This document shows, piece by piece, positions 25,949-63,490 of a stretch of 64,000 bases of DNA (the first letter of the stretch is position 1; each line of letters starts with the position of its first letter). The DNA comes from Mytilus trossulus (taxonomy: Eukaryota): contig NC_086382.1 in NCBI RefSeq assembly GCF_036588685.1, forward strand, positions 32,922,001 through 32,986,000, given 5' to 3'. Made by a program: the position numbers and the translations under genes. A model generated the notes under the pieces. It had not been told where the DNA came from and made no database searches. It was given only the letters and a program-made list of their open reading frames with translations.

Positions 25949-26027
25949 ATGTCGATCCCGTATTTTGTCAGTGTTATATTGATATTCTGTTTCACACTGT
26001 CGACCTTTCCTACCAGTAATGGAGAAC
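25949..26027 (+). CDS. Gene 5 exon 1: signal peptide of a multi-exon Cys-rich CD164/endolyn-like glycoprotein (3' end lies outside the window)
   Basis: MSIPYFVSVILIFCFTLSTFPTSNGE then C|GTAAGT phase-1 donor. Confidence 0.85.
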
Positions 26028-27337
26028 GTAAGTGACCTACAAAACTCAAATAAAAACAAGTGACACGTGTGTGCTGGTGTGTGACAAATAAAATTTGTTG
26101 TCACCTGATGATACATGGTCATCATAAGTTATTTATGTAATTTTAACCTTGAATCACACCTGTGTACACAGCAATGAGCAATTCTGCTAATTCTCAGTCC
26201 AGACATATCTAAAATTCTGCTAGAAAATCATAACAACTTTTTAGGGGTATATTTGAAATCGTTTAGAAATTTAACATTTACTGTTTACAAACATCTTCAA
26301 AAAATCTAGTTTGTTGGCACCAATGAGTTGTTCTTACCTGGGACAATGGTGTAACAGCGCAAAAAAATTAGAACAAACTAATGAAAAACATTTAAAGACA
26401 AACAAGAATGAGAAACATTAACTCGAATAATTACAGCGCCCCCTGTCCTCCAGAGTGTCATTGTCCTCCAGAGTGATCGAAGTGATCGTAATATAAAGAC
26501 TGGATGATTCGGGTTAGAGAAACATAAAAAAATATATGACTAACACTCAATTACAGGCTCCTTACTTGGGACACCCCTAAAAGGCACTGGCGCACATATA
26601 CAATGTAGAATGTGATGAGGTTAAACTAGTTTAAAGGTGCTGAACCTCCCCTAACCAGAGACAGCTAGTGGTGTAACAGTACAACATACATGACATAAAA
26701 ACAAACCTAAAAAATCAAGGGCTCAACTACTGTCTTATTAGATGGATATACAAACAGAAATACATCTGACAAATACAGGGAGAACATGGTAGGATACTTA
26801 CAATGTATACATCCCCACAGCAAAATTACATCACCCTTCCAATCGATTTACACATTAAGGGTAAAGAGGTCATAAACAGTCAAAGAAAACATGACTTTGT
26901 GCAATGCCATGATACATGTATTGGAGACTCAGTCTGAGGTACATGCATGTATGTTTAATTTCCATGAAGGTCAGTGAAGGTACAATGTACACCAAATGTA
27001 GAACTGAGTTGCTGCTACATTGTATGTAGAGTTACAATGTTTGTCGAGAACAAGTCGGTGAAGGTAGAACTGAGTTGCTACTATGTAGAGTTACAATGAG
27101 AACAGGGTTCTCTGCAAATATTTCATTTAGCATCCTAGGAAAAACAGGCAAATTTGAAATGCCATGTTGTTTCTAAAAATAAACTTAAGCATCACAGCCA
27201 TATTATGTTATAATCAATTCAGATAGCATCACAATCAATAAATATAGCATCATATTATCAAGATGCTAAAAGGCCTTGCATTGGGGATAACACTGAAAAG
27301 TAACTATTTAAACCTTAGTATCCATGTATAAATAGCA

Positions 27338-27525
27338 GGCATGGGGTAATCCTAATCAGTAATCGTAATCAGCTGTAATCGATTACATTTTGCAGTAAAA
27401 TCCTACATGTATGTAATCAGTAATGATTATGTAATCGATTACATTGCAAAAAACAGGGGTAATCATGATTACTTTCAGATTACTTTAAGATTACATTCAT
27501 ATGATTACTTGCTGATTACAATTTA
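27338..27525. repeat. GTAATC/GATTAC motif cluster, probable DNA-transposon terminus
   Basis: Many direct and inverted GTAATC motifs following CAGGCATGGG. Confidence 0.5.
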
Positions 27526-30500
27526 AATCTTGTATATATATGAAAATAGTTTTTGAAAGACAAGTTGAAAATAAGAAAATGTAAAGCTTGAAAGAAAAAT
27601 TATGGAAGTAGTATTCACAATTATGGGACCTTGTTTAATGTGATAAATTGTATCATCTATGTAACAAATTTGTATAACGAAGTGTTTTATTTTGTTAACA
27701 GTTTACCAAGGAAATTGCCTCTCCAATATTTCGTTGTGAGATTGATCTCTTATGAGACAAGAATATGCCTTGAAAGCATTTTTTCCCTTGATAGAAAACT
27801 TCTGATATTAACTCCAAAAGGAAATCCTTTTCTTCAGAATGGCAGTAACTTGGGGCTATGGGCAAGTCGTGGAAAGATAGGCAATACCATTTACAATGTA
27901 CCAAAAGATAAAACATAAAACAAAACATAATGACATGAGTTCAATATGAAAATGAGACCATGCTGCTTAAAACAATATTTCCACAACCTCTTTCCTTTTT
28001 TTCATCAATAAATATGTATTGCAATCACAAAAGAGAGCAGAAGAGTCTTACTATATTTTGAAGGGAACTGACAAAACAAAAAAAACACACCACCATCACA
28101 TATGTAGAGTTGGGGTAAAATCACCAATGAGAAAACTGGACACCAGAGTTCAAATGAAGTTGTCTGAATTTTAGCGAAAAAACGCAACTGACAACTGTAC
28201 ACTCTTCAACAACAACCCCCCCCCCCCCCCCCCCCCCCCCTGGATCCGCCAATGATAATTAGTCTGTTCAGGGTGAAATATTCTCTGCAAAATATGTAAC
28301 TGTTTGAAAATTAAGTTGAAATAAGAAAATTTCATCTTTTATTTCATATTTGATTGTTCCAAAATCAATGAAAGTCTTCTACATGTACATGTTACAATAT
28401 CTACACTTTTATTAGGTTGATTTCTATTAACACAGCTCATATGTTAATGACAGATACTAGGAAACTACTAATTCTTCCTTGTATCATGTTTAAAGAGAAT
28501 ACATGATATAAAGTATTGATCAATATTTGTTGTAAATTCTGACTCTCCATTTATTTATTATCATCTTCATTATCAACCTTGAGGATCTTGTTTAAAACAG
28601 GAAACTGAGTTATTGAATTTAAATCTATTTTCATTCATTTATGATTGATTGGTGAACAAGATGTATTATATTTAAGCCTTTAATCCAATTTAAAAAAATA
28701 TGCCTTTAAATTTTATTTTTTTTGGCAGCATTAGCAATGATTGATTTTTATCAATTTCAAATCCCTTTAAAAATGAGCAAAAACTGTTTCATACTATTTG
28801 ATTTGGCTAACATTTTATTAAACTTTATAAGCAGCAACGAAAATATAAATCACATCTGACACTAATGTCATTTAAGAAAACAAAATTTACTTGATTGAAC
28901 ATTTATAAGAATTTTAAAATTTATCTTTCCGGATACATATATATTATAATACATGTAATATAATAATTATTATCTTAATTTGACAGTAAAAGAAAATTCA
29001 GACATTCTTAGTTTTATAATATAAATATCCTAGAAATGACATGAATGACCAATGGCAAATTTTTTGTTTTTCAACCAAAACTGTGATAAGTTTGATTACA
29101 AGTTTGTTTTTTTAAATAATTTCGATTAAAGAGACTTTAATTTTAGTTTGAAAAACATTAAAGAACTTGATTTGAAATCTAGTTGTAAAAACTGAAAACA
29201 TTTCTTATGTACTTATAAAGAGTTCAGAGTGCACTCTTTATATATGTACATTATACAACATTTATTGTGTTTAGTTTATAAGTATGTCTGCCTTAGACTT
29301 GTAGGACATCAGATAATTAATTGCAAAGTTGGTGACGTGAGACCTTCAACTTAAGTAGGAAGATTTAAGTCATGTGATGTTATTACTTTGATTTAACAGC
29401 AATCAATGTTGACTTCATCATTCTATTTGCGTGCGTTATAGCTAATTTCCTAATGCTTGTAGAGTAAAGCTTTGGTTGGCTAGCTAACTTTGTAAATGTT
29501 ACCTCAAGCTTTGTAACTAAGATTGACATCATCAAACAATATATATATATATAGGCATAATTAAACCTGTATATATTATATTTAAATTTTTATTGGAAGC
29601 TATTTCAATTACAATTGTACAATATACATACAAAGCAAGCAAACTAACCAAAGTCTTGCTCTACATGCAGTAGTAAATAAGCTGTAAAGGCAAAATTATG
29701 TTATTTTTTTGATTGACCAGTAGGATCATAGAAGATTCTTTAATATTAAGTTCTGAAATAAAATTGGTTTGCTTGAATAATGCGGAATGTTACAGTGTGT
29801 ACATATATATATGATCCCAGACATGTGATTCATCTAGAGGGAGTCAAAATCTCTTGATTTTAAACCTTCTTCCATCCTTCACATTTTTAATCATTCAAAT
29901 CTTCTGTTTTAACTTTTTTCAAAATTTCAAACACTGTGCGACATCAATGTAAACAAAAAATGAAGACTGACAATTTTTTTAGGCCAATTTTTTTGGGCAT
30001 CAATAATTGTCAGTCTTTATTTTTTGTTAACATCGATGTCACCATGAATTGCATGTATGTTATTTTGTGTCACTGATGCAGGTAATATTTTATGCATGTA
30101 AATCAAAGAACTGGTGCATTTGTAATCCCTCAGTACTTCAGCCTAGTATTAATATTTGGCACTGGAGTTTACTATTAAAATAGAACAATCAATATCCAGC
30201 CAAAAAATGACTTATGAGACACTATCTATCAAGTGTTTTCCTTAAAATTATTTTCCAGTTGTAGGTAAAATGTAGGTAAAATTAGGAAGTTAGATACTAA
30301 TCAACTTATAAAATCAAAATTTTCTTCATTCAGCTACATGTATGTTATCAACAAAAAGTAGTTGAACTTTAAACTATTATTCAAGGATTAGTATGACATT
30401 TTGATGATTTAGGTATATTTGTAAAAATAGTCACTAGAGATCAAATTATTTTGTGCAATTTTAATAAGATGTAACTCAAGCAGAACTTTATAACTCATCT

Positions 30501-31490
30501 TTTGAAATCAGTATCCTGTTGATAGTTTCACAATTTTGTCATTGAATTGATACTTGTATGGCATTTCTAAAATACTATCTTTTATATTAATATTATCCTT
30601 TTTATTTACTGTACAGATTTTTTAGAGAAAAAATAAAATGATTGAGTTTATTCATTAATAGAATCAGACATTTTGAAGATTTTGTGAAGCAAGATAATCT
30701 TATTTTTTTTTAACTATCTGATTGAAAGCATATCTGACATGTCTGACATGTACACATTCATGACATTGTTTTCGTAGGAAGGTTGTTAATATAAGGAAAT
30801 AGACATTAAAAAAATATGTGTAAAAATAAAAAAAAACTTTAGAATCTATTCTTAGTATTTTGTTTTACTTGACTTGATAAGGAAATTGCATTGTTAGTTG
30901 ATAGTAGATATGTGAAAGTCTTGAAGTCTTTTTAAAACTTTGGGTGAAATTGAGCTTGTATCTTATAGTATACTGTAGATTCATTTATGTTCTGAATTTA
31001 AATTTTCGTGGATATTTAATTCCTAAAAGACTGTATAACACGCTATCAGAAAGAAACTATATAAGTACTTCGTTTTACATTTTAAATCATGATTAACCTA
31101 TACCCACTAAATCCATGAAATGAAATTTGATCCACAGTACACACTGTCCTTGGTTGAAAACACTATGTTGACGCCAAGATGTCCGTCAGGTTTTTTCTGT
31201 GTTATTTGAATACTCTTCTGTAAAATTTCAAGGTCATAGCAGGCACGGGCATGTAGCAGGAATTTACAATCATACTCAACTTTAGCAGTTTCAATTAAAA
31301 CAGAACATCCACTTTAACAATGCTTATTTTTTTTCAGTTGGGGAGAGGGAGGGAGGGTGGTGGTCCCTGGATTTTTTAGGAACCCCTTGAACCTCCTGGC
31401 TCCCTTTATGCAGGGTTGTCTATATTTCACATATTCAGAACTTGTGGTCATAATTGTTGTCACACAGTCCATTACAGTCTTCTGAATGTC

Positions 31491-32867: not shown

Positions 32868-32969
32868 CTGTTAGCTGTGAAACGCAAAACCAAACAGCCT
32901 GCTGTAAATATGCAGAATGTGCATACATCAACTGCACAAATGTTACTGAAGTTACAACTTACCATGAAG
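32868..32969 (+). CDS. Gene 5 exon 2 (102 nt): Cys domain 1, first half
   Basis: TTTCAG| (P)VSCETQNQTACCKYAECAYINCTNVTEVTTYHE G|GTAAGT; phase 1-1. Confidence 0.88.
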
Positions 32970-35376: not shown

Positions 35377-35445
35377 GTTGTCATGCCAAAGTCAACTTAA
35401 CTAAACTAGAAGGCGTTTGCAAGAAAGACACTGTTAAAACTATTT
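35377..35445 (+). CDS. Gene 5 exon 3 (69 nt): Cys domain 1, second half
   Basis: TTTTTCAG| (G)CHAKVNLTKLEGVCKKDTVKTI T|GTAAGT; phase 1-1. Confidence 0.88.
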
Positions 35446-36015: not shown

Positions 36016-36033
36016 GTTCAGGTCCAGAAGCAG
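36016..36033 (+). CDS. Gene 5 exon 4 (18-nt micro-exon): (C)SGPEA
   Basis: TTTTTTCTTTCAG| GTTCAGGTCCAGAAGCAG |GTATGT. Completes the split TGT codon for Cys 8. Confidence 0.78.
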
Positions 36034-39177: not shown

Positions 39178-39285
39178 TAGATAAATGCGGCTTAGTAAAA
39201 ACTGAAACAGACTGTTGTAACACCACTGCCAATGCTGGTTGTGCTTGGTTAGGAGCTTGTGCCAACAGCACAATGAAACTTAACG
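39178..39285 (+). CDS. Gene 5 exon 5 (108 nt; NAGNAG alternative start at 39181): Cys domain 2, first half
   Basis: TTTTACAG| (V)DKCGLVKTETDCCNTTANAGCAWLGACANSTMKLN G|GTAAGT; phase 1-1. Confidence 0.88.
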
Positions 39286-39306
39286 GTAAGTGTCTATAAA
39301 CTGCAT

Positions 39307-40201: not shown

Positions 40202-40258
40202 CTTGCTACAATGCCACTGATTTACCAAAACGTTGTAATAATGAATCCACAGATTCAT
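40202..40258 (+). CDS. Gene 5 exon 6 (57 nt): Cys domain 2, second half
   Basis: TGTTTTAG| (A)CYNATDLPKRCNNESTDS T|GTAAGT; phase 1-1. Confidence 0.88.
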
Positions 40259-41046
40259 GTAAGTTTGATTTTAACCTCATTTTTTAAGGTCAAAGTTAAC
40301 AGACATGACAGACCTCAAATGAAAGCACTTCTTAGAGTTGACTTTATTAGTCAGAAAGATTTACTATATTAGCTAAAATGGAGGTATTGAGGTAACTTTA
40401 AGAGGAAATCACAAGAATTGTTTTGATGGTAGTTCATTATGTTTTATTCTTGTATGATTTTAAAAATGAGCAAAAGAACTTGCAAGAAAGCCTTTAAACA
40501 CAAAGAAGCTTTGGAATACTTCATGGAAGACCCCTCTGTTTTAAAAAAATTAGTTGAGCATTGCCCTAAAAGTTAGAAGTTGTAGGTGCATTTTTAAAAC
40601 AAATTCCACAACGAGCAAAGATATACATAGTTTTCGATACTGAGAATTTCTTCTGAATTTCATCTTTTAACTTGTGGTGCTCTTTATTGCAAAACTCTAG
40701 GACTGAAAATACGCATAAACTATGAGTATTTCAGTATGACAATTTTGATAATAAAATTTGTGTGTGAATTAGCAGCTGATGAAGTGTCGAAAACAAGAGA
40801 AAAAAAAGATTTACAGCATCAGTATTGAGAATTTTCTATTCTAAAAGTATCATACATTTCTTAACTGTTTGGAATAATGATGACAATCATAAACATGATA
40901 AAGGCTGTATGTATCCTTTACTCTATATATGATTTGTAAAATGATTTGTAAAATGATTTGTAAAATGTATAGTGATAGTCTATGGTGACCTATAGTTGAT
41001 AATTTTGTGTGGAGAGTTGTCTCATTGGCAATCATACCAAATCTTC

Positions 41047-42829: not shown

Positions 42830-42890
42830 ATATTTGCAGAAAAATTAAATTGAAATGTATTTAAATTTGTACTTTTATTTTATTTTTCAG

Positions 42891-42899
42891 GTCTAACTA
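42891..42899 (+). CDS. Gene 5 exon 7 (9-nt micro-exon): (C)LT
   Basis: ACTTTTATTTTATTTTTCAG| GTCTAACTA |GTAAGT. Needed to complete Cys 8 of domain 2 and to avoid a stop codon. Confidence 0.75.
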
Positions 42900-47000: not shown

Positions 47001-48607
47001 AGGATCTAAAATTATTATATTAAGTATTGTGCAATAGCAAGTCTTTTCAATTGCACAGTATTGTGCAATGGCAAGAAATATCTAATTTCACAATATTGTG
47101 AAATAGCAAATTTTTTTTTAATTAAGAGTTATCTTTCTTTGTCCAGTATAGTAAGCAAGAAATATCTGCAAGAATTTTTTTTAATTGGAGTTATCTTTCT
47201 TTGTCCAGAATCAACTTAAATCTTTGTTATATACAATATACAATGTATATTCACTTTTTACTACCAACTGATAAATTTAAATAATCTTTACCATTCAGTG
47301 ATAACAAGCAGTTTTTTACATCATGTATTAAAATGAGTAGTAATTGTTGCAAACTCCATTAGAATATTTTAATTGAAATTAGTTTTGGAATAAGGGAAAG
47401 GGGGATGTGAATAAAAAATTGGGTTAAATTTTTCTCATTTGAAATTTCATAAATAAAAAGAAAATTTCTTCAAACATTTTTTTGAGAGGATTAATATTCA
47501 ACAGCATAGTGAATTGCTCTAAGAGAAAACAAAAATTTTAAGTTCATTTAAATACATTCATTCTGTGTCAGAAACCTATGCTGTGTCAACTATTTAATCA
47601 CAATCCAAATTTAGAGCGGAATCCAGCTTGAATGTTGTGTCCATACTTGCCCCAACCGTTCAGGGTTCAACCTCTGCGGTCGTATAAAGCTACACCCTGC
47701 GGAGCATCTGGTTGGTCTTGTTTTCAAATTGGTCTACATTAAAGTCCAAAGGGTCCAAAATTAAACTTAGTTTGATTTTAACAAAAATTGAAATCTTGGG
47801 GTTCTTTGATATGCTGAATCCAAACATGTACTTAGATTTTTGATTCTGGGCCCAGTTTTCAAGTTGGTCCAAATCAGGATCTAAAATTATTATATTAAGT
47901 TTTGTGCAATAGCAAGTCTCTTCAATTGCACAGTATTGCGCAATGGCAAGAAATATCTTATTGCAAAATATTGTGAAATAGCAATTTTGTTTTTAATTAG
48001 AGTTATCTTTCTTTGTCCAGAATAGTAAGCAAGAAATATCTAATTGTAAGAATTTTTTTTATTTGGAGTTATCTTTCTTTGTCCAGAATCAACTTAAATC
48101 TTTGTTATATATACAATATACAATGTATATTCACTTTTTACTACCAACTGATAAATTAAAATAATCTTTACCATTCAGTGATAACAAGCAGTTTTTTTAC
48201 ATCTTAATATTTTATGATGTATTTAAATGAGTAGTAATTGTTGCAAACTCCATTAGAAATTTTAATTGAGATTAGTTTTGGAATAAGGGAAAGGGGGATG
48301 TGATTAAAAAAATTGGGTTCAATTTTTCTCATTTGAAATTTCATAAATAAAAAGAAAATTTCTTCAAACATTTTTTTGAGAGGATTAATATTCAACAGCA
48401 TAGTGAATTGCTCTAAGAGAAAACAAAAATTTTAAGTTCATTAGAACACATTCATTCTGTTTCAGAAACCTATGCTGTGTCAACTATTTAATCACAATCC
48501 AAATTTAGAGCTGAATCCAGCTTGAATGTTGTGTCCATACTTGCCCCAACCGTTCAGGGTTCAACCTCTGCGGTCGTATAAAGCTACACCCTGCGGAGCA
48601 TCTGGTT
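44012..48607 (+). mobile_element. Nested stack of HINE-like family 2 elements (heads at 44012, 44724, 45783; tails at 47713, 48607)
   Basis: Head TTTTTATACGACCGCA + (GTC)n. Tail TGCGGTCGTATAAAGCTACACCCTGCGGAGCATCTGGTT. Internal ~120-bp tandem units. Confidence 0.85.
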
Positions 48608-48748
48608 TCTTTTGCCTCTGATCTTTATACAATCTATATGATTAATACTTGTTTAGAAAAAATGTGCATGGGCCTAGTGATTAAATAATTGTTACCTGGC
48701 ATGATTGAAAAATATATTGTAATGTTTATCTTATTTATTTTGTATTAG

Positions 48749-48757
48749 AATTAAAAG
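48749..48757 (+). CDS. Gene 5 exon 8 (putative 9-nt micro-exon): (K)LK
   Basis: TTATTTATTTTGTATTAG| AATTAAAAG |GTAAGG; phase 1-1. Not required for frame, so less certain. Confidence 0.55.
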
Positions 48758-48907
48758 GTAAGGTATTGTATACATTCTATATTGTATGTTATTGGTTATG
48801 AAAAAAACACATTTTCATTCATAATTTTTTTTTCACATGTTTTGTGTTATGATTTAACCAAATTAATGCTGATAATGCTGCTTTAAGTTCCAGAAAACTA
48901 ATATGGT

Positions 48908-49165
48908 TTTGATGACCCACCTATGGGCATTATGTGTCTGTTCTTTCATCCCTCCGTCTGTCGATCCCTTTTAAGGTAAAATTTTGATCAGAGTAGTTTT
49001 TGGTGAAGTTGAAGTCCTATCAACTTCAAGTACATGTGATCCCTATGTTTTTATCTTTCTAATTTTAATGCTAAATTAGAGTTTTGCCCCAATTTCACAG
49101 TCCACTGAACATAGAAAATGATAGTGCGAGTGGGGCATTGATTTACCATGAACAAATTCTTGTTT
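48908..49165 (+). mobile_element. Short HINE/DINE-like element
   Basis: Homologous to 62785-63075 and to 16672-16910 (-). Confidence 0.6.
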
Positions 49166-50059
49166 GAGATTGAACTAACAACATAATTTAATAATGTTAT
49201 CTGCCTTTTATTTTGTTACTCTATTACACATAGTTATTGTATTAATTTCAAAACCCCACAACACTATAATTTGTAGAGGCTGAAGTACAGATTTATCTGT
49301 ATGTATGGTAACCGTAAAACCAAGATGATCTAACAATAGTACTATGACAATTATATTTCTTTGACATCCATATATGATTTTGGTTACAAGTAAACTATCC
49401 TCAATATATGGTGTTGCAATGTCTTTTTAATACATCACAATTTGGACAAAAACTACTTTAAAAATATTGTGAAAATTTTTGGTAATGTTTTAAAACCATT
49501 TGGCAAACAAGCTATCTTGTGGAGAGCTGTCTCATTGGCAATCATACCACATCTTCTTTTTGTGTGAGCATATATTCATAACATACAAAACATAGTTCCA
49601 ATAAAATAGTATCTTTTTCAGAAAATTAACAATTAAAGGTCACTTAATGGCCTATTATATAACAAAATGATAAATATACACAATACTACATGTTAAAATG
49701 CTATATTTTGATTGGTTTTTAACGAGGGAGACATTTAACTCTGTCCATGAATAACATTCTATTAATTTTCAAAGAGACACTTTATCATTTATGTGCTTTT
49801 TAGGTAAAGATTGCATGAATGAAATGCAATCTAAACCTTATGGGACTGACTTGATACCTAAATGTTCCAAGGCTTATGGCTTATCACTACCTTAGGCTTT
49901 TTTTATACTCAAAATATAGTGCATTAGTCATAACGTTCTATACATCCTATCCATGAAATTTATCGATGTAAAAAATTCTCAGATATTCAAGGGGGAAAAT
50001 TATGTTACACTTGTCAAGATAATTTTATACTGTAACTTTTGCAAGTTGCAGGAATCTAA

Positions 50060-50827
50060 TACTGTGAAAGTACTTTAATTCGTGGGTATCAATTTTCGTG
50101 GTTTGAGCAATATTTACATGTTCGTGGGTTTTTAAATTCGTGGATTTTAGTTTTCAAAAAAAAAAAAAAAAAGTGAAAAAATTAAAGCCTTTAGACACGC
50201 TGGATTGAAGGAAATTGCAAAGTAAACATTGAACCGTGTAAATCCTAGTGACAACATAAACCCAAGATAGAGTGATCAACAGATTAAAGACCATGCAAGG
50301 TGTAAATTAGGCCATAAACATTTCACCTAAAGAAAACAGCAACATAAACAAATGTGATAAACGTGTCTTAAATTGTCAAATGATTTTTTTCATAATCAAG
50401 CCCAGCATGAAATTATAATTTCCCACGTGTACGAAAACTATGAGGATATAAAATGAACACTTTATCATACATTGTCATACTAGCATATCAATACCGGAAA
50501 TCTGACTTTCATCATCAAAAACATTTTTTATGAGAATTAAAAAATCAAAAGTTGTACAGTTTAGGTTATTAAAGATTAAATGAGTATAATCTTGCATGAA
50601 GGTGTAGTTCTAGAGTGTGACTGCTATTATCGGTAAATTATTTTCCGATTTGGCGTTATTCAATACATTCTTTAGATCATATCAGTAGTCAAACTTACAT
50701 AAGGGTCTTTCTTGACTTTGTTTGGACAATGGTTATTTTATTTCGTTGGACACTTAAATTGGTGGATAAAGTCAACCACGAAAACCACGAAAATTGGTAC
50801 CCCACGAATAAAAGTACTTTCACAGTA
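50060..50827. mobile_element. Tc1/mariner-type MITE with TA target duplication
   Basis: TA-CTGTGAAAGTACTTT..TTCGTGGG pairs with CCCACGAA..AAAGTACTTTCACAG-TA. An empty site is visible in the paralogous segment at 43220-43243 (GGAATCTTAATATCTGTTCT). Confidence 0.88.
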
Positions 50828-51054
50828 TCTGTTCTCAAAATAGAATGGTGTCATTGTTAAAATCATCTTTGAAAAATTTGGAGTTATCTTCCTTTGTCTA
50901 GAATTGCTGTTAAATCAACTACCACCAATGCAAAAATTTATTTAACTTCCCACTGATGTATTGAAGCAATCTTTACCGTTCACTGCTTAATAATATCAGA
51001 GCAATCAGTATCATAATTTGAACAACACATACCTAACTACATGTAGGAAATGAA

Positions 51055-51664
51055 TAGAGCAGATTGTAACCCCTCAAAAACATTGTCAACCTTGGCTTTT
51101 CCTAAGTTGACAATGTTTTCTCTGGGTAACATTCTGCTCTATCACCTTCTCAGCTTTGGCTTTTCCCCAAGTTGGAAATGTTTTCTCAGGGTAACAATAT
51201 GCTCTAGCACCATAAGTTGACAATGTTTTCTCAGGGTAACAATATGCTCTAGCACCCTAAGTTGACAATGTTTTCTAAGGGTAACAATCTGCTCTATCAC
51301 CCTAATTTGACAATGTTTTCTAAGGGTAACAATATGCTCTAGCACCCTAAGTTGACAATGTTTTCTAAGGGTAACAATATGCTCTAGCAATCTAAGTTGA
51401 CAATATTTTCTCAGGGTAACATTCTGCTCTATCGCCTAAGTTGACAATGTTTTCTAAGGGTAACATTCTGCTCTATCACCCTAAGTTGACAATGTTTTCT
51501 AAGGGTAACAATATGCTCTAGCAATCTAAGTTGACAATATTTTCTCAGGGTAACAGTCTGCTCTATCGCCCTAAGTTGACAATATTTTCTCAGGGTAACA
51601 TTCTGCTCTATCGCCCTAAGTTGACAATGTTTTCTAAGGGTAACATTCTGCTCTATCACCCTCT
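51055..51664. repeat. 45-bp minisatellite (~12 copies) preceded by one inverted copy
   Basis: Unit CTAAGTTGACAATGTTTTCTAAGGGTAACAATATGCTCTAGCACC. Inverted arm at 51055-51090. Confidence 0.9.
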
Positions 51665-51706
51665 ATATGTACTACTGCTGATGAAAGTTAATTGTTTTCT
51701 TATCAG

Positions 51707-51823
51707 GAACCTGTAAATCTTTCATTAAGAAGGAGGAATGCTGTAACACCACCTTCACCCAGTTAACAGATTGTTTGTTCTATGAGTGTAAAAATAAGAC
51801 AGATCCTACAAAGAGTATCAGTG
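51707..51823 (+). CDS. Gene 5 exon 9 (117 nt): Cys domain 3, first half
   Basis: TTTTCTTATCAG| (G)TCKSFIKKEECCNTTFTQLTDCLFYECKNKTDPTKSIS G|GTATGT; phase 1-1. Confidence 0.88.
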
Positions 51824-52028
51824 GTATGTACATTATCTATTGTGTTGATGGTGTCAAAAACTGGCTATTTTAAATTTTGAATCAATTTTTAACCTGTTTT
51901 CGTAGTAAATATCGTAATTGATTTTATTAAAGTAATGTGGAGATTTACTAATTTAAGGGTTATTTTTTAACCGTCTGATTAAAAAAGTTCAGATTTTTTG
52001 TAATGTTGAATTCTCTCTTTATTATGAG

Positions 52029-52846
52029 TAATAGGAAAACTATTTGATATGTGCGTACCTTGCAAGGTCCTCATGTCTGTCAGACAGTTTTCACTTGACC
52101 TCGACCTCATTTCATGGACCAGTGAACAAGGTTAAGTTTTGGTTGTCAAATCCATATCTCAGATACTATAACCAATAGGGCTTGTATATTCCGTGTATGG
52201 AAGGACTGTAAGGTGTACATGTCCAACTGGCAGGTGTCTTCTGACCTTGACCTCATTTTCATGGTTCAGTGGTTATAGTTAAGTTTTTTTGTGTTTTGGT
52301 ATGTTTTTCTCATACTAAATGCAACAGGTATACTATATTTGTTGTATGGAATGATTGTAAGGTGTACATGTCTAGCGGGCAGATGTCATGTGACCTTGAC
52401 CTCATCTTCATGGTTCAGTGGTCAAAGTTAAGTTTTTGAGTTATGGTCTTTTTATCTAATACTATATGCCATAGGTCAACTATATTTGGTGTATGGAAAT
52501 ATTTTATGATGTTTATGTCAGTCACGCAGGTTTTATTTGACCGTGACCTCAATTTCACGGTTCATTGCACAGTGTTAAGTTTTTTGTGTTTTGGTCTATT
52601 TTTCTTCAACTATAAGTAATAGGTCAACTATATATGTTGTAAAGAAGCATTGTTAGCTGTACATGTCTGCCTGGCATGGTTCATCTGACCTTGACCTCAT
52701 TTTTAAGGTTCATTGGTCTTTGTTTAGTTATCTTGATTAATGGTAAGTTTATGTGACAGTTGTAATAAAGCTTCATACTTAGGACTATCAACATAATATC
52801 AATGATTAGTACAGAAGGCGAGACAGTTCAGCGTGTGCACTCTTGT
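52029..52846 (+). mobile_element. HINE-like fragment with ~150-bp TGACCTTGACCTCATTTTCATGG tandem units
   Basis: About five units, ending AGGCGAGAC..AGCGTGTGCACTCTTGT. Confidence 0.6.
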
Positions 52847-53279
52847 GAGTAAATATCTAACATTTTGCATAATTCAGGACCTTTGCTGTAAGTGTTATGT
52901 AGAAAAATATGGTTATGTTAGACACTTGTGGATAGGGTTTTAATTTATAACTATTTTATCTTCTACTTAATAATTGATATTATATACCTGCCAGTTTAAA
53001 AAAAAATCTAATGTCAATTTTTAAGCTATCCAAAGCAGACAAAATGCATCTCTTTTACAGTTTTTTTTTTTTTAGTTTATCACTGAATGGTTTTGAATCA
53101 GTATATAGTTGTTTAAATGTAATTTTCAATACTTGGATGTTTTTTTTTAAATTTTAGTTTATTAAATTGAGAGTTTTAAGTTTTTGAGGAAACCTTGGGA
53201 ACTCCTATAAACTGGGAAAGTTGACAGGTCTTAAATTAAGTGAAAAGCTTATAATTATTCTTTTATTTTATAAATTCAG

Positions 53280-53351
53280 GTTGTTTCAATAAATCAGACC
53301 AAGCTGTGATAAATAAAACCTGTGATTTGACAGAAAAAGTTAACCAAACTT
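53280..53351 (+). CDS. Gene 5 exon 10 (72 nt): Cys domain 3, second half
   Basis: ATTCAG| (G)CFNKSDQAVINKTCDLTEKVNQT T|GTAAGT; phase 1-1. Confidence 0.88.
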
Positions 53352-53404
53352 GTAAGTATTAATTTGGACATACCTCCTGTTAGAGCAATTATATCTGTTT
53401 ATAA

Positions 53405-53975: not shown

Positions 53976-54333
53976 CAATATTTATGTTTCCTTTACCAAC
54001 AACAACAATACTTTATTTTAAGAGGGTTACACAGTAAGCTATAAAACTAATCTTCCTCAGGCCCTCATCATAAAAAATCAAACGAAATGCAAACATATAC
54101 ATTCCATACATTAGTATAAAAAGTCAAGTATGATATAAATAATGTTCAATACAACTTGATAAAATGTGATGAAAAAATAAACATGATGACATGATCAGTT
54201 TTTAATATTATTTATACAGATAGGTTGATTTCAATAAATAATCTGTATTTATAAGAATTAATATTTGTCTCTCATTTTTCTGGCATATGCAATATCATTA
54301 TTGAACCATTCAGGACCTGAGGTTGTCTGTCTC

Positions 54334-57300
54334 TTTTTAGCTCACCTGGCCTAAAAGGCCATGTGAGCTTTTCTCATCACTTGGCGTCCGTCGTCGTCTG
54401 TCGTCGTTAACAATTTTTCAAACATCTTCTTCTCTGAAGCTACTGAATGGATTTGGATGAAACTTAGCATGATTGTTCCTTAGAGTATCCTGCACAAAGT
54501 GTGTGCTTTGATTTTTGATCTGTCAAAAAACATGGCCGCCGTTACTAAAAATAGAACATAGGGGTCAAATGCAGTTTTTGGCTTATATCTCAAAAACTAA
54601 AGCATTTAGAGCAAATCTGACATGGGGTAAAAATGTTCATTAGCTGAAGATCTATCAGCCCTGAAATTTTCAGATGAATCAAACAAACCATTGTTGGGTT
54701 GCTGCCACTTAATTGGTAATTTTAAGGAAATTTTGCAGTTTTTATACGACCGCTCCTCGTATATTGCTATCACGTTGGCGTCGTCGTCGTCGTCGTCGTC
54801 GTCCGAATACTTTCAGTTTTCGCACTCTAACTTTAGTAAAAGTGAATAGAAATCTATGAAATTTTAGCACAAGGTTTATGACCATAAAAGGAAGGCTGGT
54901 ATTGATTTTGGGAGTTTTGGTCCCAACATTTTAGGAATTAGGGGCCAAAAAGGGCCCAAATAAGCATTTTCTTGGTTTTCGCACTATAACTTTAGTTTTA
55001 GTTAATAGAAATCTATGAAATTTTGACACAAGGTTTATGACCACAAAAGAAAGGTTGGGATTGATTTTGGGAGTTTTGGTTTCAACAGTTTAGGAATTAG
55101 GGGCCAACAAAGGGCCCAAATAAGCATTATTCTTGGTTTTCACACAATAACTTTAGTTAAAGTAAATAGAAATCAATGAAATTTAAACACAATGTTTATG
55201 ACCACAAAAGGAAGGTTGGTATTGATTTTGGGAGTTTCGGTCCTAACAGTTTAGGAATTAGGGGCCAAAAAGGGACCCAAATAAGCATTGTTCTTGGTTT
55301 TCGCACCATAGCGTTAGTATAAGTAAATAGATATCTATGAAATTTAAACACAAGGTTTATGACTATAAAAGAAAGGTTGATATTGATTTTGGGAGTTTTG
55401 GTCCCAACAGTTAAGGAAAAAGGGGCCCAAAGGGTCAAAAATTAAACTTTGTTTGATTTCATCAAAATTGAATAATTGGGGTTCTTTAATATGCCGAATC
55501 TAACTGTGTATGTAGATTCTTAATTTTTGGTCCCGTTTTCAAATTGGTCTACATTAAGGTCCAAAGGGTCCAAAATTAAACTTAGTTTGATTTTAACAAA
55601 AATTGAAACCTTGGGGTTCTTTGATATGCTGAAACTAAAAACGTACTTAGATTTTTGATTATTGGCCCAGTTTTCAAGTTGGCCCAAATCGAGATCCAAA
55701 ATTAAACATTGTTTGATTTCATTAAAAATTGAATAATTGAGGTTCTTTGATATGCCAAATCTAACTGTGTATGTAGATTCTTAATTTTTGGTCCAGTTTT
55801 AAAATTGGTCTAAATTAAAGTGCAAAGGGTCCAAAATTAAACTAAGTTTGATTTTAACAAAAATTAAATTCTTGGGCCTCTTTGATATGCTGAATCTAAA
55901 CATGTACTTAAATTTTTGATTATGGGTCCAGTTTTCAAGTTTGTCCAAATCAGGATCTAAAATTATTATATTAAGTATTGTGCAATAGCAAGTCTTTTCA
56001 ATTGCACAGTATTGTGCAATGGCAAGAAATATCTAATTTCACAATATTGTGAAATAGCAAATTTTTTTTAAATTAAGAGTTATCTTTCTTTGTCCAGTAT
56101 AGTAAGCAAGAAATATCTGCAAGATTTTTTTTTAATTGGAGTTATCTTTCTTTGTCCAGAATCAACTTAAATCTTTGTTATATACAATATACAATGTATA
56201 TTCACTTTTTACTACCAACTGATAAATTTAAATAATCTTTACCATTCAGTGATAACAAGCAGTTTTTTTACATCTTAATATTTTATGATGTATTTAAATG
56301 AGTAGTAATTGTTGCAAACTCCATTAGAATATTTTAATTGAAATTAGTTTTGGAATAAGGGAAAGGGGGATGTGATTAAAGAATTGGGTTCAATTTTTCT
56401 CATTTGAAATTTCATAAATAAAAAGAAAATTTCTTCAAACATTTTTTTGAGAGGATTAATATTCAACAGCATAGTGAATTGCTCTAAGAGAAAACAAAAA
56501 TTTTAAGTTCATTTGAATACATTCATTCTGTGTCAGAAACCTATGCTGTGTCAACTATTTAATCACAATCCAAATTTAGAGCGGAATCCAGCTTGAATGT
56601 TGTGTCCATACTTGCCCCAACCGTTCAGGGTTCAACCTCTGCGGTCGTATAAAGCTACGCCCTGCGGAGCATCTGGTTGGTCATTATCTTGAATATTATT
56701 ATAGATAAAGATAAACTGTAAACAGCAAAAATGATCAGCAAAGTAAGATCTACAAATAAGTTAATATGACAAAAATTGTCAATTGACCCCTTAAGGGGTT
56801 ATTGTCCTTTAATGACAATTTTTCACAATTTATTCATCATATTTGCTGACTTTAAAAAATCTTCTCCTCTGAAACTACTGAATGGATTTGGATGAAACTT
56901 AGCATGATTGTTCCTTAGATTATCCTGCACAAAGTGTGTGCTTCGATTTTTGATCCATCAAAAAACATGGCCGCCGTTACTAAAAATAGAACATAGGGGT
57001 CAAATGCAGTTTTTGGCTTATATCTCAAAAACTAAAGCATTTAGAGCAAATCTGACATGGGGTAAAAATGTTCATTAGCTGAAGATCTATCAGCCCTGAA
57101 ATTTTCAGATGAATCAAACAAACCATTGTTGGGTTGCTGCCACTTAATTGGTAATTTTAAGGAAATTATGCAGTTTTTGGTCATTATCTTGAATATTATT
57201 ATAGATACAGATAAACTGTTAACATCAAAAATTATTAGCAAAGTAAGATCTACAAATAAGTTAATATGACCAAAATTGTCAACTGACCCCTTAAGGGGTT

Positions 57301-58643
57301 ATTGTCCTTTAATGACAATTTTTCACAATTTGTTCATCATATTTGCTAACTTTAAAAAATCTTCTCCTCTGAAACTACTGAATGGATTTGGATGAAACTT
57401 AGTATGATTGTTCCTTAGATTATTCTGCACTAAATGTGTGCTTCGATTTTTGATCCATAAAAAAACATGGCCGCCGTTACTTAAAATAGAACATAGGGGT
57501 CAAATGCAGTTTTTGGCTTATATCTCAAAAATGAAAGCATTTAGAGCAAATCTGAGATGGAGTTAAAATGTTCATTAGGTCAATATGTATCAGCCCTGAA
57601 ATTTTCAGATGAATCAAACAACCCATTGTTGGGTTGCTGCCACTTAATTGGTAATTTTAAGGAAATTTTGCAGTTTTTGGTCATTATCTTGAATATTATT
57701 ATAGATAAAGATAAACTGTAAATAGTAAAAATGATCAGCAAAGTAAGATCTACAAATAAGTCATTTGATCAAAATTGTCAATTGACCCCTTAAGGGGCTA
57801 TTGTCCTTTAATGACAATTTTTCACAATTTATTCATCATATTTGCTGACTTTAAAAAATCTTCTCCTCTGAAACTACTGAATGGATTTGGATGAAACTTA
57901 GTATGATTGTTCCTTAGATTATTCTGCACTAAGTGTGTGCTTCGATTTTTGATCCATCAAAAAACATGGCCGCCGTTACTTAAAATAGAACATAGGGGTC
58001 AAATGCAGTTTGGCTTATATCTCAAAAATGAAAGCATTAAGAGCAAATCTGAGATGGAGTTAAAATGTTCATTAGGTCAATATGTATCAGCCCTGAAATT
58101 TTCAGATGAATCAAACCACCCATTGTTGGGTTGCTGCCACTTAATTGGTAATTTTAAGGAAATTTTGCGGTTTTTGGTCATTATCTTGAATATTATTATA
58201 GATACAGATAAACTGTTAATAGCAAAAATGTTAAGCAAAGTAAGATCTACAAATAAGTCAATTTGATCAAAATTGTCAATTGACCTCTTATGAAGTTATT
58301 GCCCTTTAAAGACTTTTTTCACAATTTGTTCATCATGTTGACTTACTTTAAAAATCTTCTCCTTTGAAACTGCTGTATCAATTTCAGCCAAACTTAGGCT
58401 AAATGAGTTTCAGAGTTTCAGAGTATCTAGTATAAATTTTATATTTCATTTCCTTGTATATCAAGAAACATAGCTCCTATGGCTAAAATAGAACATAGGA
58501 GAAAATATTTTTTTTTTGCTTTTGAAGATAATATGATGATTCAAAGAACATTTAAATAAATTGAAAAGCCAAAATAATGATTGATGAGAGATTAAACCAA
58601 AAAAAATCAGGTGAGCGATTCAGGCTCTTGAGAGCCTCTTGTT
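54334..58643 (+). mobile_element. HINE-like family 1 element with ~500-bp tandem units, interrupted by a family 2 element
   Basis: TTTTTAGCTCACCTGGCC ... CAGGTGAGCGATTCAGGCTCTTGAGAGCCTCTTGTT. Confidence 0.8.
54739..56678 (+). mobile_element. Full-length HINE-like family 2 element nested in family 1
   Basis: The host unit GCAGTTTTTGGTCATTATC is split into GCAGTTTTT-[element]-GGTCATTATC. Confidence 0.85.
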
Positions 58644-58829
58644 ACTCTTTTAGTAACAATTGGTGCATGTTTATCTAGAACTGCATTAGATATGTCACAC
58701 CACATCTGAATACATGTATTTGGCTGACTTTCATGATAAAACTCCAGTAGCAGTTATTTAAAGCAGTTGAAATGCTGTGTTAATCAAGTAATTTAAATTT
58801 ATTTTTATGAAATTTATATCAGGAGATGT

Positions 58830-61800: not shown

Positions 61801-62175
61801 AAAATATTTTCTCGCACAATATCTGGACATCGGTGGACATGCAACATTGCAAAACCACACGTTTACAAAGAAAAATCAACACTCAGACTATAGTCATAAA
61901 GTAGGACAATAAATGAACAAATGACAAACCCGGGACACAGACTGAGTACAAACAGTAGACCATCAACTCAGAAAACTTACAGTAAAAAAGAAACATGGAT
62001 AACAAAAAACATGCTGGGGCGACACCAGAGAGTGAAGAGAACTTGCTTCTTGCTAGACACTTTCCGTGAAAACAATTCGATATTAAGACAATCTTTTGTT
62101 TCAGTTTTTTCTCTTTTTTTTAAATTTCTAACATGAGGCATTTGCCTCATTTGCCTCAATGTAGTTACGGCCCTG
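58830..62175. mobile_element. Non-autonomous TIR element with 5-bp TSD, carrying nested insertions
   Basis: Perfect 14-bp TIRs CAGGGCCGTAACTA and TAGTTACGGCCCTG, with GATGT on both sides. Confidence 0.8.
59930..61704 (+). mobile_element. HINE-like family 2 element
   Basis: Same head and tail as 54739-56678. Confidence 0.85.
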
Positions 62176-62784
62176 GATGTCTTGGAAAAGTTTGATTTGG
62201 GGGGGGGGGGGATTTTTCAAAGAAGCTGTGTCACCTAGAAAAATAAATTGTATGGAAACTTGTATTAAAATCATCTAAATGTACACAAAGGTTGATGTAA
62301 GCAATTATAGACAACCATACCACCTTCAACAATAAAAAAATACTATATTGTATAGTTGACTTTGAAAGATGCGAAATAATTCAAATGAGAAAAGTTACAG
62401 CCTATTTTATAAAAAAACAATTTACAAAACATATATAATAAGTCTAGGAGTATTATGAAATTAATTTCAAAGGTTTACTGAAGATTTATTGATATTCTTT
62501 GAATATTTATTGGAATTTGTGGGTACATGGGAACCACATATTCAAATGGTGAACGAATTACAAATTTTACAAGGGAATGTAGGCAGACTTTAACAAAACT
62601 ACCAAATTAAATACCTATAAACATGCCAGTTTACAATAAATAAAAGAATCAGCAAAATTTGAGAGGACTTAGAAAATGTTCCAATCAATTATTTTTTACT
62701 TGTTTGATTAGTGATATTCATTGCGGATATAGATTATCTGGTAAATTGTATTGTAAGCACTCTAAAGCCCACTGCTATGAAACT

Positions 62785-63075
62785 TTTTTATGCCACAATT
62801 ATGGGCATTATGTTTTTTGGTCTGTGCATCCATTTGTCCGTCCGTTTGTTTAGCTGTCATTCCTTCGTCCATCTGTCCTGCTTCAGGTTAAGTTTTTGGT
62901 CAAGGTAGTTTTTGATGAAGTTGAAGTCAAATCAACTTGAAACTTAGTACACATGTTCCTTATGATGTGATATTTCTAATTTTAATGCCAAATTAGAGTT
63001 TTTACTCTACTTTCATGAAACATAGAAAATGATAATGCAGATGGGGCATTCATGTACTAGGGACATATTCTTGTT
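62785..63075 (+). mobile_element. Short HINE/DINE-like element
   Basis: TTTTTATGCCAC..(GTCC-like)n..TGGGGCAT..GGACATATTCTTGTT. Confidence 0.6.
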
Positions 63076-63463
63076 TACAGGTGTTATGCCTCTTGGAAAT
63101 TAAAAATTTTATGGAAAATATTGCTATCTCTAAAGCAATCTTTTGCCATTGCTTTTTAAAATATATTTAACCCTTACCATTTTGGAACAGTAATATAACT
63201 GCCTTACCCAAAATGATAGTATTTGCGGCAATAATAATAATTGCCTCCAATGGTTCTCCATACTTCAAGAGATTAATAAGATACAATTTTAAGGTTTAAG
63301 GCACATTTTGAGCTCGCGTACGATCTTGGAAAATTGAAATCAGATAAGAATTTAGTATGACAATGTGTTTATTCCTTTTTTGATGGAAGGAGACTCCCTA
63401 TTATATATATGGTACAAATTTAATGATAACAAATATTTAAAGAGATTTTATATTTATTGCTAG

Positions 63464-63490
63464 GTGATGCAACACCAGTTGGTCCTACAG
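63464..63490 (+). CDS. Gene 5 exon 11 (27-nt micro-exon): (C)DATPVGPT; the gene continues beyond the window
   Basis: TATTTATTGCTAG| GTGATGCAACACCAGTTGGTCCTACAG |GTAAGT. Completes Cys 8 of domain 3. Confidence 0.8.

What the first reader, a model, noticed from the sequence alone, without database searches (positions are those of the whole stretch)
25949..63490. Hidden gene with three tandem 8-Cys CD164/PSI-like domains built from phase-1 exon modules
Seen: 11 exons (79,102,69,18,108,57,9,9,117,72,27 nt; 667 nt over 37.5 kb) give MSIPYFVSVILIFCFTLSTFPTSNGE-PVSCETQNQTACCKYAECAYINCTNVTEVTTYHEGCHAKVNLTKLEGVCKKDTVKTICSGPEA-VDKCGLVKTETDCCNTTANAGCAWLGACANSTMKLNACYNATDLPKRCNNESTDSCLTKLK-GTCKSFIKKEECCNTTFTQLTDCLFYECKNKTDPTKSISGCFNKSDQAVINKTCDLTEKVNQTCDATPVGPT. 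Each module is C-x7/8-CC-x4-9-C-x4/5-C-x9-12-C-x9-12-C-x7-9-C, encoded as long exon + short exon + micro-exon. There are 13 N-glycosylation sequons. Known (recalled): vertebrate CD164 has one 8-Cys domain with CxxC, encoded by two exons between two mucin domains. Inference: this is a CD164 relative whose domain was triplicated by exon-module duplication, with CxxC contracted to vicinal CC and no visible N-terminal mucin. Family assignment rests on Cys spacing and neighbourhood, because the C-terminus is outside the window.
Basis: partly seen in the sequence, partly recalled or inferred. Interest (0 to 1): 0.82.

Follow-up and report, generated by a model that had tools for sequence, protein, structure and literature searches.

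The report
Five-domain CD164-like mussel sialomucin gene
This is a real Mytilus trossulus gene for a CD164/endolyn-type membrane glycoprotein with five (not three) tandem 8-cysteine domains, which the public annotation already names in part but splits into two genes, probably because two 9-base exons link the halves.

Summary
All 11 exons are at the stated coordinates with the stated lengths and translation (667 nt, 13 sequons). The genome is Mytilus trossulus. Two RefSeq proteins reproduce nine of the 11 exons exactly: LOC134687835 ('uncharacterized': signal peptide + modules 1-2) and XP_063404365.1 ('sialomucin core protein 24-like': modules 3-5 + tail). Both tails pass Pfam MGC-24 (36 and 46 bits; cut-off 28.5). 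The full model has 18 exons, 413 codons, all introns in phase 1. The modules match the vertebrate CD164 Cys domain profile-to-profile (score 27.3; shuffles 9.0 +/- 2.0), and predicted structures hit PSI domains almost exclusively (Z 2.5-4.4). The two 9-nt micro-exons are unproven. Multi-module CD164 proteins occur across molluscs. It is a new architectural variant of a known family and an annotation correction, of moderate interest.

The parts
25949..26027 (+). Exon 1: start codon and signal peptide (26 codons + 1 nt, phase 1)
   Evidence: Identical to residues 1-26 of RefSeq P0027. Hydrophobic core with Kyte-Doolittle 3.13 and a GTAAGT donor.
32868..32969 (+). Module 1 long exon (Cys1-Cys5)
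   Evidence: Module profile 48 bits. In P0027.
35377..35445 (+). Module 1 short exon (Cys6, Cys7, first base of the Cys8 codon)
   Evidence: In P0027.
36016..36033 (+). Linker micro-exon K1, 18 nt: supplies the GT that completes Cys8, then SGPEA
   Evidence: In RefSeq P0027 and P0026 and in M. coruscus P0002. A homologous CDGPE linker occurs in transcript-derived P0013.
39178..39285 (+). Module 2 long exon
   Evidence: 53.5 bits. In P0027. The predicted fold matches PSI domains.
40202..40258 (+). Module 2 short exon, ends with the T of the Cys8 codon
   Evidence: In P0027.
40259..40286 (+). Intron read-through used by RefSeq LOC134687835 (Cys + KFDFNLIF + TAA): an annotation artefact or a minor secreted isoform
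   Evidence: P0027 ends this way. The equivalent tails in M. coruscus and M. galloprovincialis differ in length and sequence.
40378..40383 (+). ATGGAG before a GT: source of the 'ME' start of RefSeq XP_063404365.1; not supported
   Evidence: The RNA contig uses acceptor 51707, not the 51686 acceptor that this start needs.
42891..42899 (+). Candidate 9-nt micro-exon K2a (completes Cys8 of module 2, then L, T)
   Evidence: Pyrimidine-rich acceptor and GTAAGT donor. It is the only 9-nt candidate in the intron under stringent criteria. It lies in unique DNA. Transcript use is not shown.
48749..48757 (+). Candidate 9-nt micro-exon K2b (K, L, K, then the G of the next Gly codon)
   Evidence: Good acceptor and a GTAAGG donor, in phase with K2a and M3L. 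Nearly unique DNA. Transcript use is not shown. K2a->M3L without K2b also stays in frame.
51707..51823 (+). Module 3 long exon
   Evidence: In P0001. A 450-nt RNA contig (run X4, depth 165) matches 51707-51825 with no mismatch and leaves the genome exactly at 51707.
53280..53351 (+). Module 3 short exon
   Evidence: In P0001. The joint 51822->53279 (GT..AG) is in contigs of all four runs.
63464..63490 (+). Linker micro-exon K3, 27 nt. The gene continues outside the window, on C10: M4L 32986361-32986474, M4S 32988156-32988203, K4 32990576-32990647, M5L 32999740-32999841, M5S 33000905-33000970, K5 33001768-33001788, T1 33005065-33005216, T2 33007928-33008073
   Evidence: K3 is in P0001. All except T1 are identical to P0001. 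The T1-type tail is used by M. galloprovincialis isoform X3, P0010.

Best explanation
This is one gene of about 57-60 kb in Mytilus trossulus (C10:32947949-33008073). It has 18 exons and all introns are in phase 1. It encodes a type I membrane glycoprotein of about 413 aa in the CD164/endolyn (MGC-24, PF05283) family. The order is: signal peptide, five tandem 8-Cys modules, a short T/P-rich stalk, the FDGxSFIGG juxtamembrane motif, one TM helix, and a short tail of about 14-15 residues that ends in NYHTL (exon T1) or NYHQM (alternative exon T2). Each module is built from a long exon (Cys1-5), a short exon (Cys6-7 plus the T of Cys8) and a linker exon that begins with GT and so completes Cys8. 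The modules are homologues of the single Cys-rich domain of vertebrate CD164 and probably adopt a PSI-like fold. By analogy with endolyn, the protein is a heavily N-glycosylated surface and endosomal receptor or adhesion molecule that cycles through its C-terminal YxxPhi signal. The five Cys domains form the ligand-binding part. Shown here: the exons, the family membership of the tail, the five modules, RNA splicing of M3L to M3S, and splicing of M3L to distant upstream sequence. Inferred: that the upstream partner is M2S via the 9-nt exons K2a and K2b (about 0.65 for this exact path), the PSI fold, and the function. RefSeq splits the gene into LOC134687835 and XP_063404365.1 at exactly this point.
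For: - Exon chain and phases.
- 16 of the 18 exons of the T2-ending form are identical to two RefSeq proteins on the same 78,455,819-bp contig.
- Pfam MGC-24 scores: T1 36 bits, T2 46 bits, P0001 50 bits with HMM 23-139 reaching into module 5. In the whole genome the model passes its cut-off only in this cluster.
- The tail is 50% identical to fish CD164 over 52 aa, E 3e-12.
- hhalign of 35 mollusc modules against 84 fish CD164 Cys domains gives score 27.3, P 4e-6. 200 column shuffles give 9.0 +/- 2.0 with a maximum of 17.1; the reversed control gives 7.0.
- The single-module Solemya protein has a CC-type module and matches the whole Pfam model, 66.8 bits.
- There are exactly five modules genome-wide.
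- One gene rather than two: the X4 RNA contig leaves the genome at 51707, not at RefSeq's 51686, with 331 further nt that lie on nothing in 47400-51706. P0001 has no in-frame Met other than its invented start. No signal-peptide exon lies between M2S and M3L, while the same scan recovers E1. Transcript-derived orthologues P0006, P0012, P0013, P0015 and P0017 are continuous from signal peptide to tail.
- M. edulis RefSeq P0009 begins inside exon M2S, read out of frame, and continues into M3L.
- PSI fold: 16 of the top 18 hits for P0001 and 13 of the top 14 for P0027 are PSI domains.
Against: - No read or contig was seen to contain the 18 nt of K2a + K2b. The letters of the 331-nt overhang were not printed.
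- No protein in two large collections bridges module 2 to module 3 in any Mytilus.
- Because every intron is in phase 1, K1->M3L (skipping module 2) and K2a->M3L (skipping K2b) are also in frame, and both fit the 331-nt overhang.
- RefSeq pipelines for two species and the M. coruscus annotation all end the 5' half by reading into the intron, which could be a real secreted isoform.
- Single module exons and the M1-M2 protein P0027 give no Pfam hit.
- Foldseek found nothing, and the VIA Z-scores are at most 4.4, in a range the tool itself calls common.
- The function rests entirely on analogy.
Confidence: 0.8

Rival explanations
1. One gene, but the main mRNA links the halves differently. Options are K2a alone (Cys-Leu-Thr-Arg), skipping module 2 altogether (K1->M3L, a four-module protein like the orthologue P0006), or another unrecognised small exon. 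This rival shares the core of the best explanation and differs only in the linker.
For: All these joins are in frame because every intron is in phase 1. The 331-nt overhang of the X4 contig fits K1+M1S+M1L+E1+63 nt of 5'UTR as well as it fits K2b+K2a+M2S+M2L+K1+M1S+61 nt. A related mytilid has four modules. M. galloprovincialis isoform X3 skips linker K3.
Against: K2a has the best splice signals in the intron and starts with the GT needed to restore Cys8, as every other linker exon does. K2b chains exactly in phase and ends with the G needed for the Gly codon. M2L and M2S are kept intact and conserved in three Mytilus species.
Confidence: 0.22
2. Two separate genes, as in RefSeq: a secreted two-module protein (LOC134687835) that ends in the intron after M2S, and a membrane three-module CD164-like protein (XP_063404365.1) with its own start.
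For: Three annotations (RefSeq for M. trossulus and M. galloprovincialis, and the M. coruscus annotation) give this split. No bridging protein is in the databases.
Against: The 3' gene would have no signal peptide. Its only start codon is an ATGGAG inside the intron joined to acceptor 51686, and the RNA contig does not use that acceptor. There is no alternative signal-peptide exon. The read-through tails differ in length and sequence between species. Orthologues from transcripts are single continuous proteins. M. edulis P0009 links M2S to M3L.
Confidence: 0.08
3. Only the tail is CD164-like. The Cys modules would be an unrelated, lineage-specific or generic PSI-type domain recruited in front of a CD164 anchor.
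For: Modules alone give no Pfam MGC-24 or PSI hit. Pairwise BLAST of the Cys regions is not significant, E 0.48. The profile match covers only 27 columns at 87% probability.
Against: The hhalign score is about 9 SD above shuffles. Pfam MGC-24 alignments extend from the tail into the last module in seven mollusc proteins, and cover the whole model in single-module Solemya. The position (directly N-terminal of stalk and TM), the 8-Cys count and the C-x4-C-T/N-glyco core are the same as in fish CD164.
Confidence: 0.08

Closest known systems
Vertebrate CD164 / endolyn / sialomucin core protein 24 (MGC-24), Pfam PF05283
   Same: Both are type I membrane proteins. Both have the juxtamembrane FDxxSFIGG motif, a single TM helix and a short tail ending in NYHTL. 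Both have an 8-Cys, N-glycosylated domain just outside the stalk, with the shared core C-x-[FW]-[VL]-N-C-T. PMC9239079 describes human CD164 as a 197-aa type I protein with two mucin domains flanking one cysteine-rich domain.
   Different: The mussel protein has five Cys domains instead of one, and a vicinal CC where all 120 fish sequences have CxxC. It has no N-terminal mucin domain, and mucin II is reduced to a 23-aa T/P-rich exon plus a short stalk. It has two alternative terminal exons (NYHTL or NYHQM). It is 413 aa against about 150-200.
Molluscan 'sialomucin core protein 24-like' predictions (M. edulis P0009, M. galloprovincialis P0010, M. coruscus 'CD164' P0011, Nucella P0014, Babylonia P0018, Solemya P0022, and unnamed transcript-derived P0006, P0012, P0013, P0015, P0017)
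   Same: They share the CC-type module, the linkers and the tail, and have 1 to 4 modules. These are orthologues or close paralogues.
   Different: None has five modules in one protein. The Mytilus entries are all truncated at the module 2/3 boundary. I found no paper on them.
PSI domain (plexin-semaphorin-integrin; Pfam PF01437)
   Same: Both are small domains of about 50 residues with 8 Cys. The predicted modules M2, M4 and M5 superpose on PSI domains of plexins A2/A4/C1, MET, RON, Sema4D/6A and integrin beta3 at Z 2.5-4.4, rmsd 1.8-3.7 A over 41-54 residues.
   Different: There is no sequence-level PSI hit and Foldseek finds nothing. The Cys spacing differs (CC, not CxxC or CxC). Disulfide connectivity was not examined. 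Modules M1 and M3 did not appear among the PSI rows.
Mucin-only CD164 relatives (porimin/TMEM123-like; insect 'mucin/porimin' and 'CD164 antigen')
   Same: They share the FDGxSFxGG-TM-YxxPhi anchor. The four neighbouring genes upstream in this cluster are of this type.
   Different: They have no Cys domain at all. The target gene is the only Cys-bearing member of the cluster.

Membership tests
CD164 / MGC-24 (PF05283) | Pfam MGC-24 model above its gathering score (28.5 bits) | tested here: met
   T1 36 bits, T2 46 bits. RefSeq P0001 50.1 bits, orthologue P0006 61.2 bits. Genome scan: T1 34.1 and T2 42.4 bits.
CD164 / MGC-24 (PF05283) | Juxtamembrane FDxxSFxGG motif, single TM helix, short tail ending in YxxPhi (NYHTL in endolyn) | tested here: met
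   Both terminal exons carry FDG[VA]SFIGG, a hydrophobic stretch of about 20 residues and a C-terminal NYHTL or NYHQM. 50% identity to the fish CD164 tail.
CD164 / MGC-24 (PF05283) | 8-Cys domain homologous to the CD164 cysteine-rich domain | tested here: met
   hhalign score 27.3, probability 87%, P 4e-6; shuffles 9.0 +/- 2.0, maximum 17.1. Pfam alignments run into the last module (HMM from position 22-29). Limits: only 27 columns align, and single modules have no Pfam hit.
CD164 / MGC-24 (PF05283) | Two mucin domains flanking the Cys domain (PMC9239079) | tested here: not met
   The signal peptide is followed directly by module 1. Only a 23-aa T/P-rich linker (K4) and a short stalk remain. 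This is architecture, not homology, and mollusc relatives share it.
CD164 / MGC-24 (PF05283) | N-terminal signal peptide (type I topology) | tested here: met
   Exon 1 has a hydrophobic core with Kyte-Doolittle 3.13 followed by a small/polar stretch. No dedicated signal-peptide predictor was available.
CD164 / MGC-24 (PF05283) | Intron inside the Cys domain at the same place as in vertebrate CD164 (two-exon Cys domain) | not tested
CD164 / MGC-24 (PF05283) | Endosomal/lysosomal sorting and heavy sialylated glycosylation | not testable with these tools
   Only the motifs are visible: 19 N-x-S/T sequons in the T2 form and the YxxPhi tail.
PSI domain (PF01437) | Sequence match to the Pfam PSI model | tested here: not met
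   No PSI hit at E <= 1 for P0001, P0002, P0006, P0027 or other relatives, nor at E <= 10 for single exons.
PSI domain (PF01437) | PSI fold | tested here: inconclusive
   Two AlphaFold2 models (modules at pLDDT about 66-86) give PSI domains as 16 of the top 18 and 13 of the top 14 hits among 48,161 chains. But Z is only 2.5-4.4 and Foldseek finds nothing.
PSI domain (PF01437) | PSI disulfide connectivity | not tested

The most novel reading that the evidence does not exclude
The linker exons act as splice-controlled switches. Every module ends on a lone T, and only the next linker exon (always starting with GT) turns it into Cys8. Skipping K2a gives TAA or TGA, and skipping K4 gives TAG, which would yield secreted two- or four-module proteins lacking the last Cys. 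Skipping K1 or K3 replaces Cys8 by Leu, as M. galloprovincialis isoform X3 does for K3. Reading into the intron after M2S gives a complete two-module secreted form. Together with two alternative sorting tails, one gene could then produce membrane, secreted and differently sorted multi-PSI receptors through micro-exon choice.
Probability: 0.2. Interest if true: 0.6.

Novelty: new variant of a known kind. Interest (0 to 1): 0.4.

Why it matters
- **Annotation:** it corrects an error repeated in at least three Mytilus genomes. One CD164-type gene is split into an 'uncharacterized' secreted protein and a truncated sialomucin with no signal peptide, very likely because two consecutive 9-nt exons escape spliced alignment.
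- **Architecture:** molluscs have turned the single Cys-rich domain of CD164 into arrays of up to five, while nearly losing the mucin domains. In humans that domain is the one required for LCMV entry (PMC9239079).
- **Fold:** the results give a testable fold assignment (PSI-like) for a domain with no solved structure. I found no paper linking CD164 to PSI.
- **Exon design:** the strict phase-1 design, with a Cys codon split at every module boundary, is a clean natural example of exon-shuffling-ready domain modules.

None of this overturns what is known. It extends a known family.

Tried and rejected
- **Pfam on single module exons:** no hit even at E <= 10. The exons are too short.
- **PDB sequence search with the module profile:** only placenta growth factor at E 0.25, a cystine-knot coincidence. 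Searches with P0006 and with fish CD164 found no solved relative.
- **Representative search:** apart from the mytilid proteins, the hits were bacterial BspA-type leucine-rich repeats sharing an FYNCTGLT motif, and one repetitive ORF. These are spurious.
- **Search for a protein bridging modules 2 and 3:** none found.
- **Read laying:** Only one call was allowed.
- **The look-up of encoding contigs:** Cross-species footprinting of K2a/K2b in M. edulis, M. galloprovincialis and M. coruscus could not be done.
- **Foldseek against PDB:** nothing, best E 1.3.
- **ESM Atlas on M1-M2:** best score 0.77, below its noise level.
- **Module tree:** 61 columns, mostly unresolved. Only M2 grouping with P0013 module 2 has support.
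- **Joined model:** Searches used single exons by reference or database protein ids. The joined 413-aa model was only checked for phase and junction codons locally.

Full report
**Observation.** The window is G000:C10:32922001-32986000 of a 1.3 Gb, 32-35% GC genome. After fixing boundaries, all 11 exons have the stated lengths, AG acceptors, GT donors (mostly GTAAGT) and phase 1. The 18-nt (36016-36033) and 27-nt (63464-63490) micro-exons have strong signals. The two 9-nt exons are GTCTAACTA at 42891-42899 and AATTAAAAG at 48749-48757. In a scan of the 11.4 kb intron for phase-1 exons with good signals, they are the only pair that chains in frame. Under stricter criteria 42891 is the only 9-nt AG...GT candidate. 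The sequon count of 13 is right.

**The gene continues beyond the window.** I fetched 40 kb upstream and 120 kb downstream. Two further long-exon modules lie at window-equivalent 64361-64474 and 77740-77841. Their short partners are at 66156-66203 and 78905-78970, with linker exons at 68576-68647 (a 23-aa T/P-rich piece) and 79768-79788. At 83065-83216 there is a phase-1 terminal exon with FDGVSFIGG, a TM helix and NYHTL-stop. A second terminal exon at 85928-86073 ends in NYHQM. The two share only 30 nt of DNA similarity, so the duplication is old. With T1 the model has 18 exons, 1242 nt and 413 codons. Every junction codon is sensible, and Cys8 of each module is rebuilt as T|GT. A profile of the five long exons hits only these five places in the whole genome (48-61 bits; next hit E 0.14). 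The five short exons are likewise the only significant hits in 224 kb.

**Identity and existing annotation.** A profile search of 1.84 billion representatives returned P0001, which is XP_063404365.1, 'sialomucin core protein 24-like [Mytilus trossulus]'. It lies on a contig of 78,455,819 bp, the length of C10. P0001 equals M3L-M3S-K3-M4L-M4S-K4-M5L-M5S-K5-T2 residue for residue after an odd start, 'ME-LIVFLSG'. P0027 (LOC134687835, 'uncharacterized', same contig) equals E1-M1L-M1S-K1-M2L-M2S and then reads through the donor into the intron (Cys-KFDFNLIF-stop). The same split is seen in M. galloprovincialis, where P0026 and P0010 carry adjacent LOC numbers, and in M. coruscus (P0002, and P0011 named 'CD164'). 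So the gene is not hidden. It is annotated in two pieces, and the 3' piece is already named CD164-like.

**One gene or two.** The 'ME' of P0001 comes from ATGGAG|GT at 40378-40383, inside the intron after M2S, joined to an acceptor at 51686. I laid Logan contigs of four runs on 47400-53399.
- The GT..AG joint 51822->53279 appears in all four runs, so these runs hold spliced RNA and M3L->M3S is real.
- In run X4 a 450-nt contig (depth 165) matches 51707-51825 without mismatch. Its other 331 nt lie on nothing in the 4.3 kb upstream.
- P0001 has no other in-frame Met.
- No signal-peptide exon exists between M2S and M3L, although the same scan recovers exon 1.
- Transcript-derived orthologues on 1.1-3 kb contigs (P0006, P0012, P0013, P0015, P0017) run from signal peptide through 3-4 modules to the tail in one ORF.
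- M. edulis P0009 starts inside M2S, read out of frame, and continues into M3L.

Together these make a single transcription unit very likely. The exact link is not shown. Because all introns are in phase 1, K2a->M3L and K1->M3L also stay in frame, whereas M2S->M3L and M2S->K2b give stop codons. K2a lies in unique DNA just past the end of a dispersed repeat, and K2b's flanks have one weak match elsewhere.

**Family.**
- Pfam MGC-24 scores 36 bits (T1), 46 (T2), 50 (P0001, HMM 23-139, reaching into module 5) and 61 (P0006). The cut-off is 28.5.
- In the whole genome the model passes its cut-off at five places, all in this cluster.
- The tail is 50% identical to fish CD164 over 52 aa.
- In fish CD164 the Cys domain occupies HMM positions of about 2-44. 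The single-module Solemya protein, which has the CC-type module followed by a real mucin domain, matches HMM 2-140 at 66.8 bits and bridges the two forms.
- A local profile-profile comparison of 35 mollusc modules with 84 distinct fish Cys domains (all 120 fish proteins have CxxC) gives score 27.3, 87% probability. 200 column shuffles give 9.0 +/- 2.0 (maximum 17.1) and the reversed control gives 7.0.
- Modules alone have no Pfam hit.

**Fold.** No CD164 structure is solved, by sequence search. AlphaFold2 models of P0001 and P0027 with small family alignments give modules at pLDDT about 66-86. Each has short helices, a beta-hairpin over the C-x4-C core, and then a helix. Foldseek finds nothing. 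VIA-align against 48,161 chains puts PSI domains at 16 of the top 18 places for P0001 and 13 of the top 14 for P0027. These are plexins, MET, RON, semaphorins, integrin beta3 and the isolated MET PSI domain 1ssl. Each hit covers one whole module (M4, M5 or M2) at Z 2.5-4.4, rmsd 1.8-3.7 A (4.7 A in one row), 41-59 residues. The Z-scores are low in absolute terms, and the consistency is the evidence. I rate the PSI-like fold as likely but not established.

**Mechanism.** By analogy with endolyn (established knowledge, and PMC9239079 for the architecture), this is a type I, heavily N-glycosylated protein with 19 sequons in the T2 form. Its C-terminal YxxPhi signal should drive endocytic and lysosomal cycling, and its Cys domains are the interaction surface. 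The mussel protein multiplies that surface fivefold and keeps only vestigial mucin. Function is inferred, not shown.

**Comparison and novelty.** Multi-module CD164-like proteins occur in mytilids, in the gastropods Nucella and Babylonia, and in unnamed transcriptome proteins. Insects have mucin-only forms. I found no paper on CD164 in Mytilus, and none linking CD164 with PSI. This is a new architectural variant of a known family, together with an annotation correction.

Noticed in passing
window 2127-3674, 9717-10262, 23348-23749 (+); L018 (window-equivalent -4378 to -3716): Four further terminal exons of mucin-only CD164/porimin-like genes lie in tandem upstream of the target, all on the + strand. 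Each has a T/S/P-rich repeat region, an F-x-G-x-SF-x-GG-like motif, a TM helix and a Yxx tail, and none has a Cys domain. Three pass Pfam MGC-24 in the genome scan. The 2127-3674 exon is the 11-aa N-x-T repeat 'comb' noted earlier.
   Followed up: partly
L006:9065-9216 and L004:1928-2073 (C10:33005065-33005216 and 33007928-33008073): There are two alternative last exons, ending in NYHTL and NYHQM, with the same phase-1 acceptor context (cag|CTGC). They share only 30 nt of DNA similarity. M. trossulus and M. edulis RefSeq models use the NYHQM exon, while M. galloprovincialis isoform X3 uses the NYHTL type.
   Followed up: partly
P0010 (M. galloprovincialis isoform X3), equivalent to window 53351 -> 64361: This predicted isoform skips linker exon K3, which turns Cys8 of module 3 into Leu (T|TG). 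By the same logic, skipping K2a or K4 gives stop codons, and skipping K1 or K5 gives Leu or Ser.
   Followed up: partly
window 47400-48600, 49000-49600 and 52000-53000: Intronic dispersed repeats are very abundant in the RNA contigs of all four runs (summed word depth up to about 4e5), far above the exons of the gene itself (about 80-350). These are probably transcribed transposable elements.
   Followed up: no
window 62784-63107: A repeat of about 290 bp has more than 40 copies at 80-85% identity on all large contigs (SINE-like).
   Followed up: no
window 54674-54715, 57109-57150, 57609-57650, 58106-58147: The same 42-nt ORF piece (ESN[KNH]PLLGCCHLI) with splice-like flanks recurs four times in the M3S-K3 intron, at a spacing of about 500 bp for the last three copies. 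It is probably a tandem or dispersed repeat, not exons.
   Followed up: no
L005/L008, window-equivalent 111743-121730: A long tandem array with a period of about 355 bp, seen as a ladder of identical weak hits in the local HMM scan.
   Followed up: no
window 13568-13701: A run of 134 N (assembly gap or masked). It was left alone.
   Followed up: no
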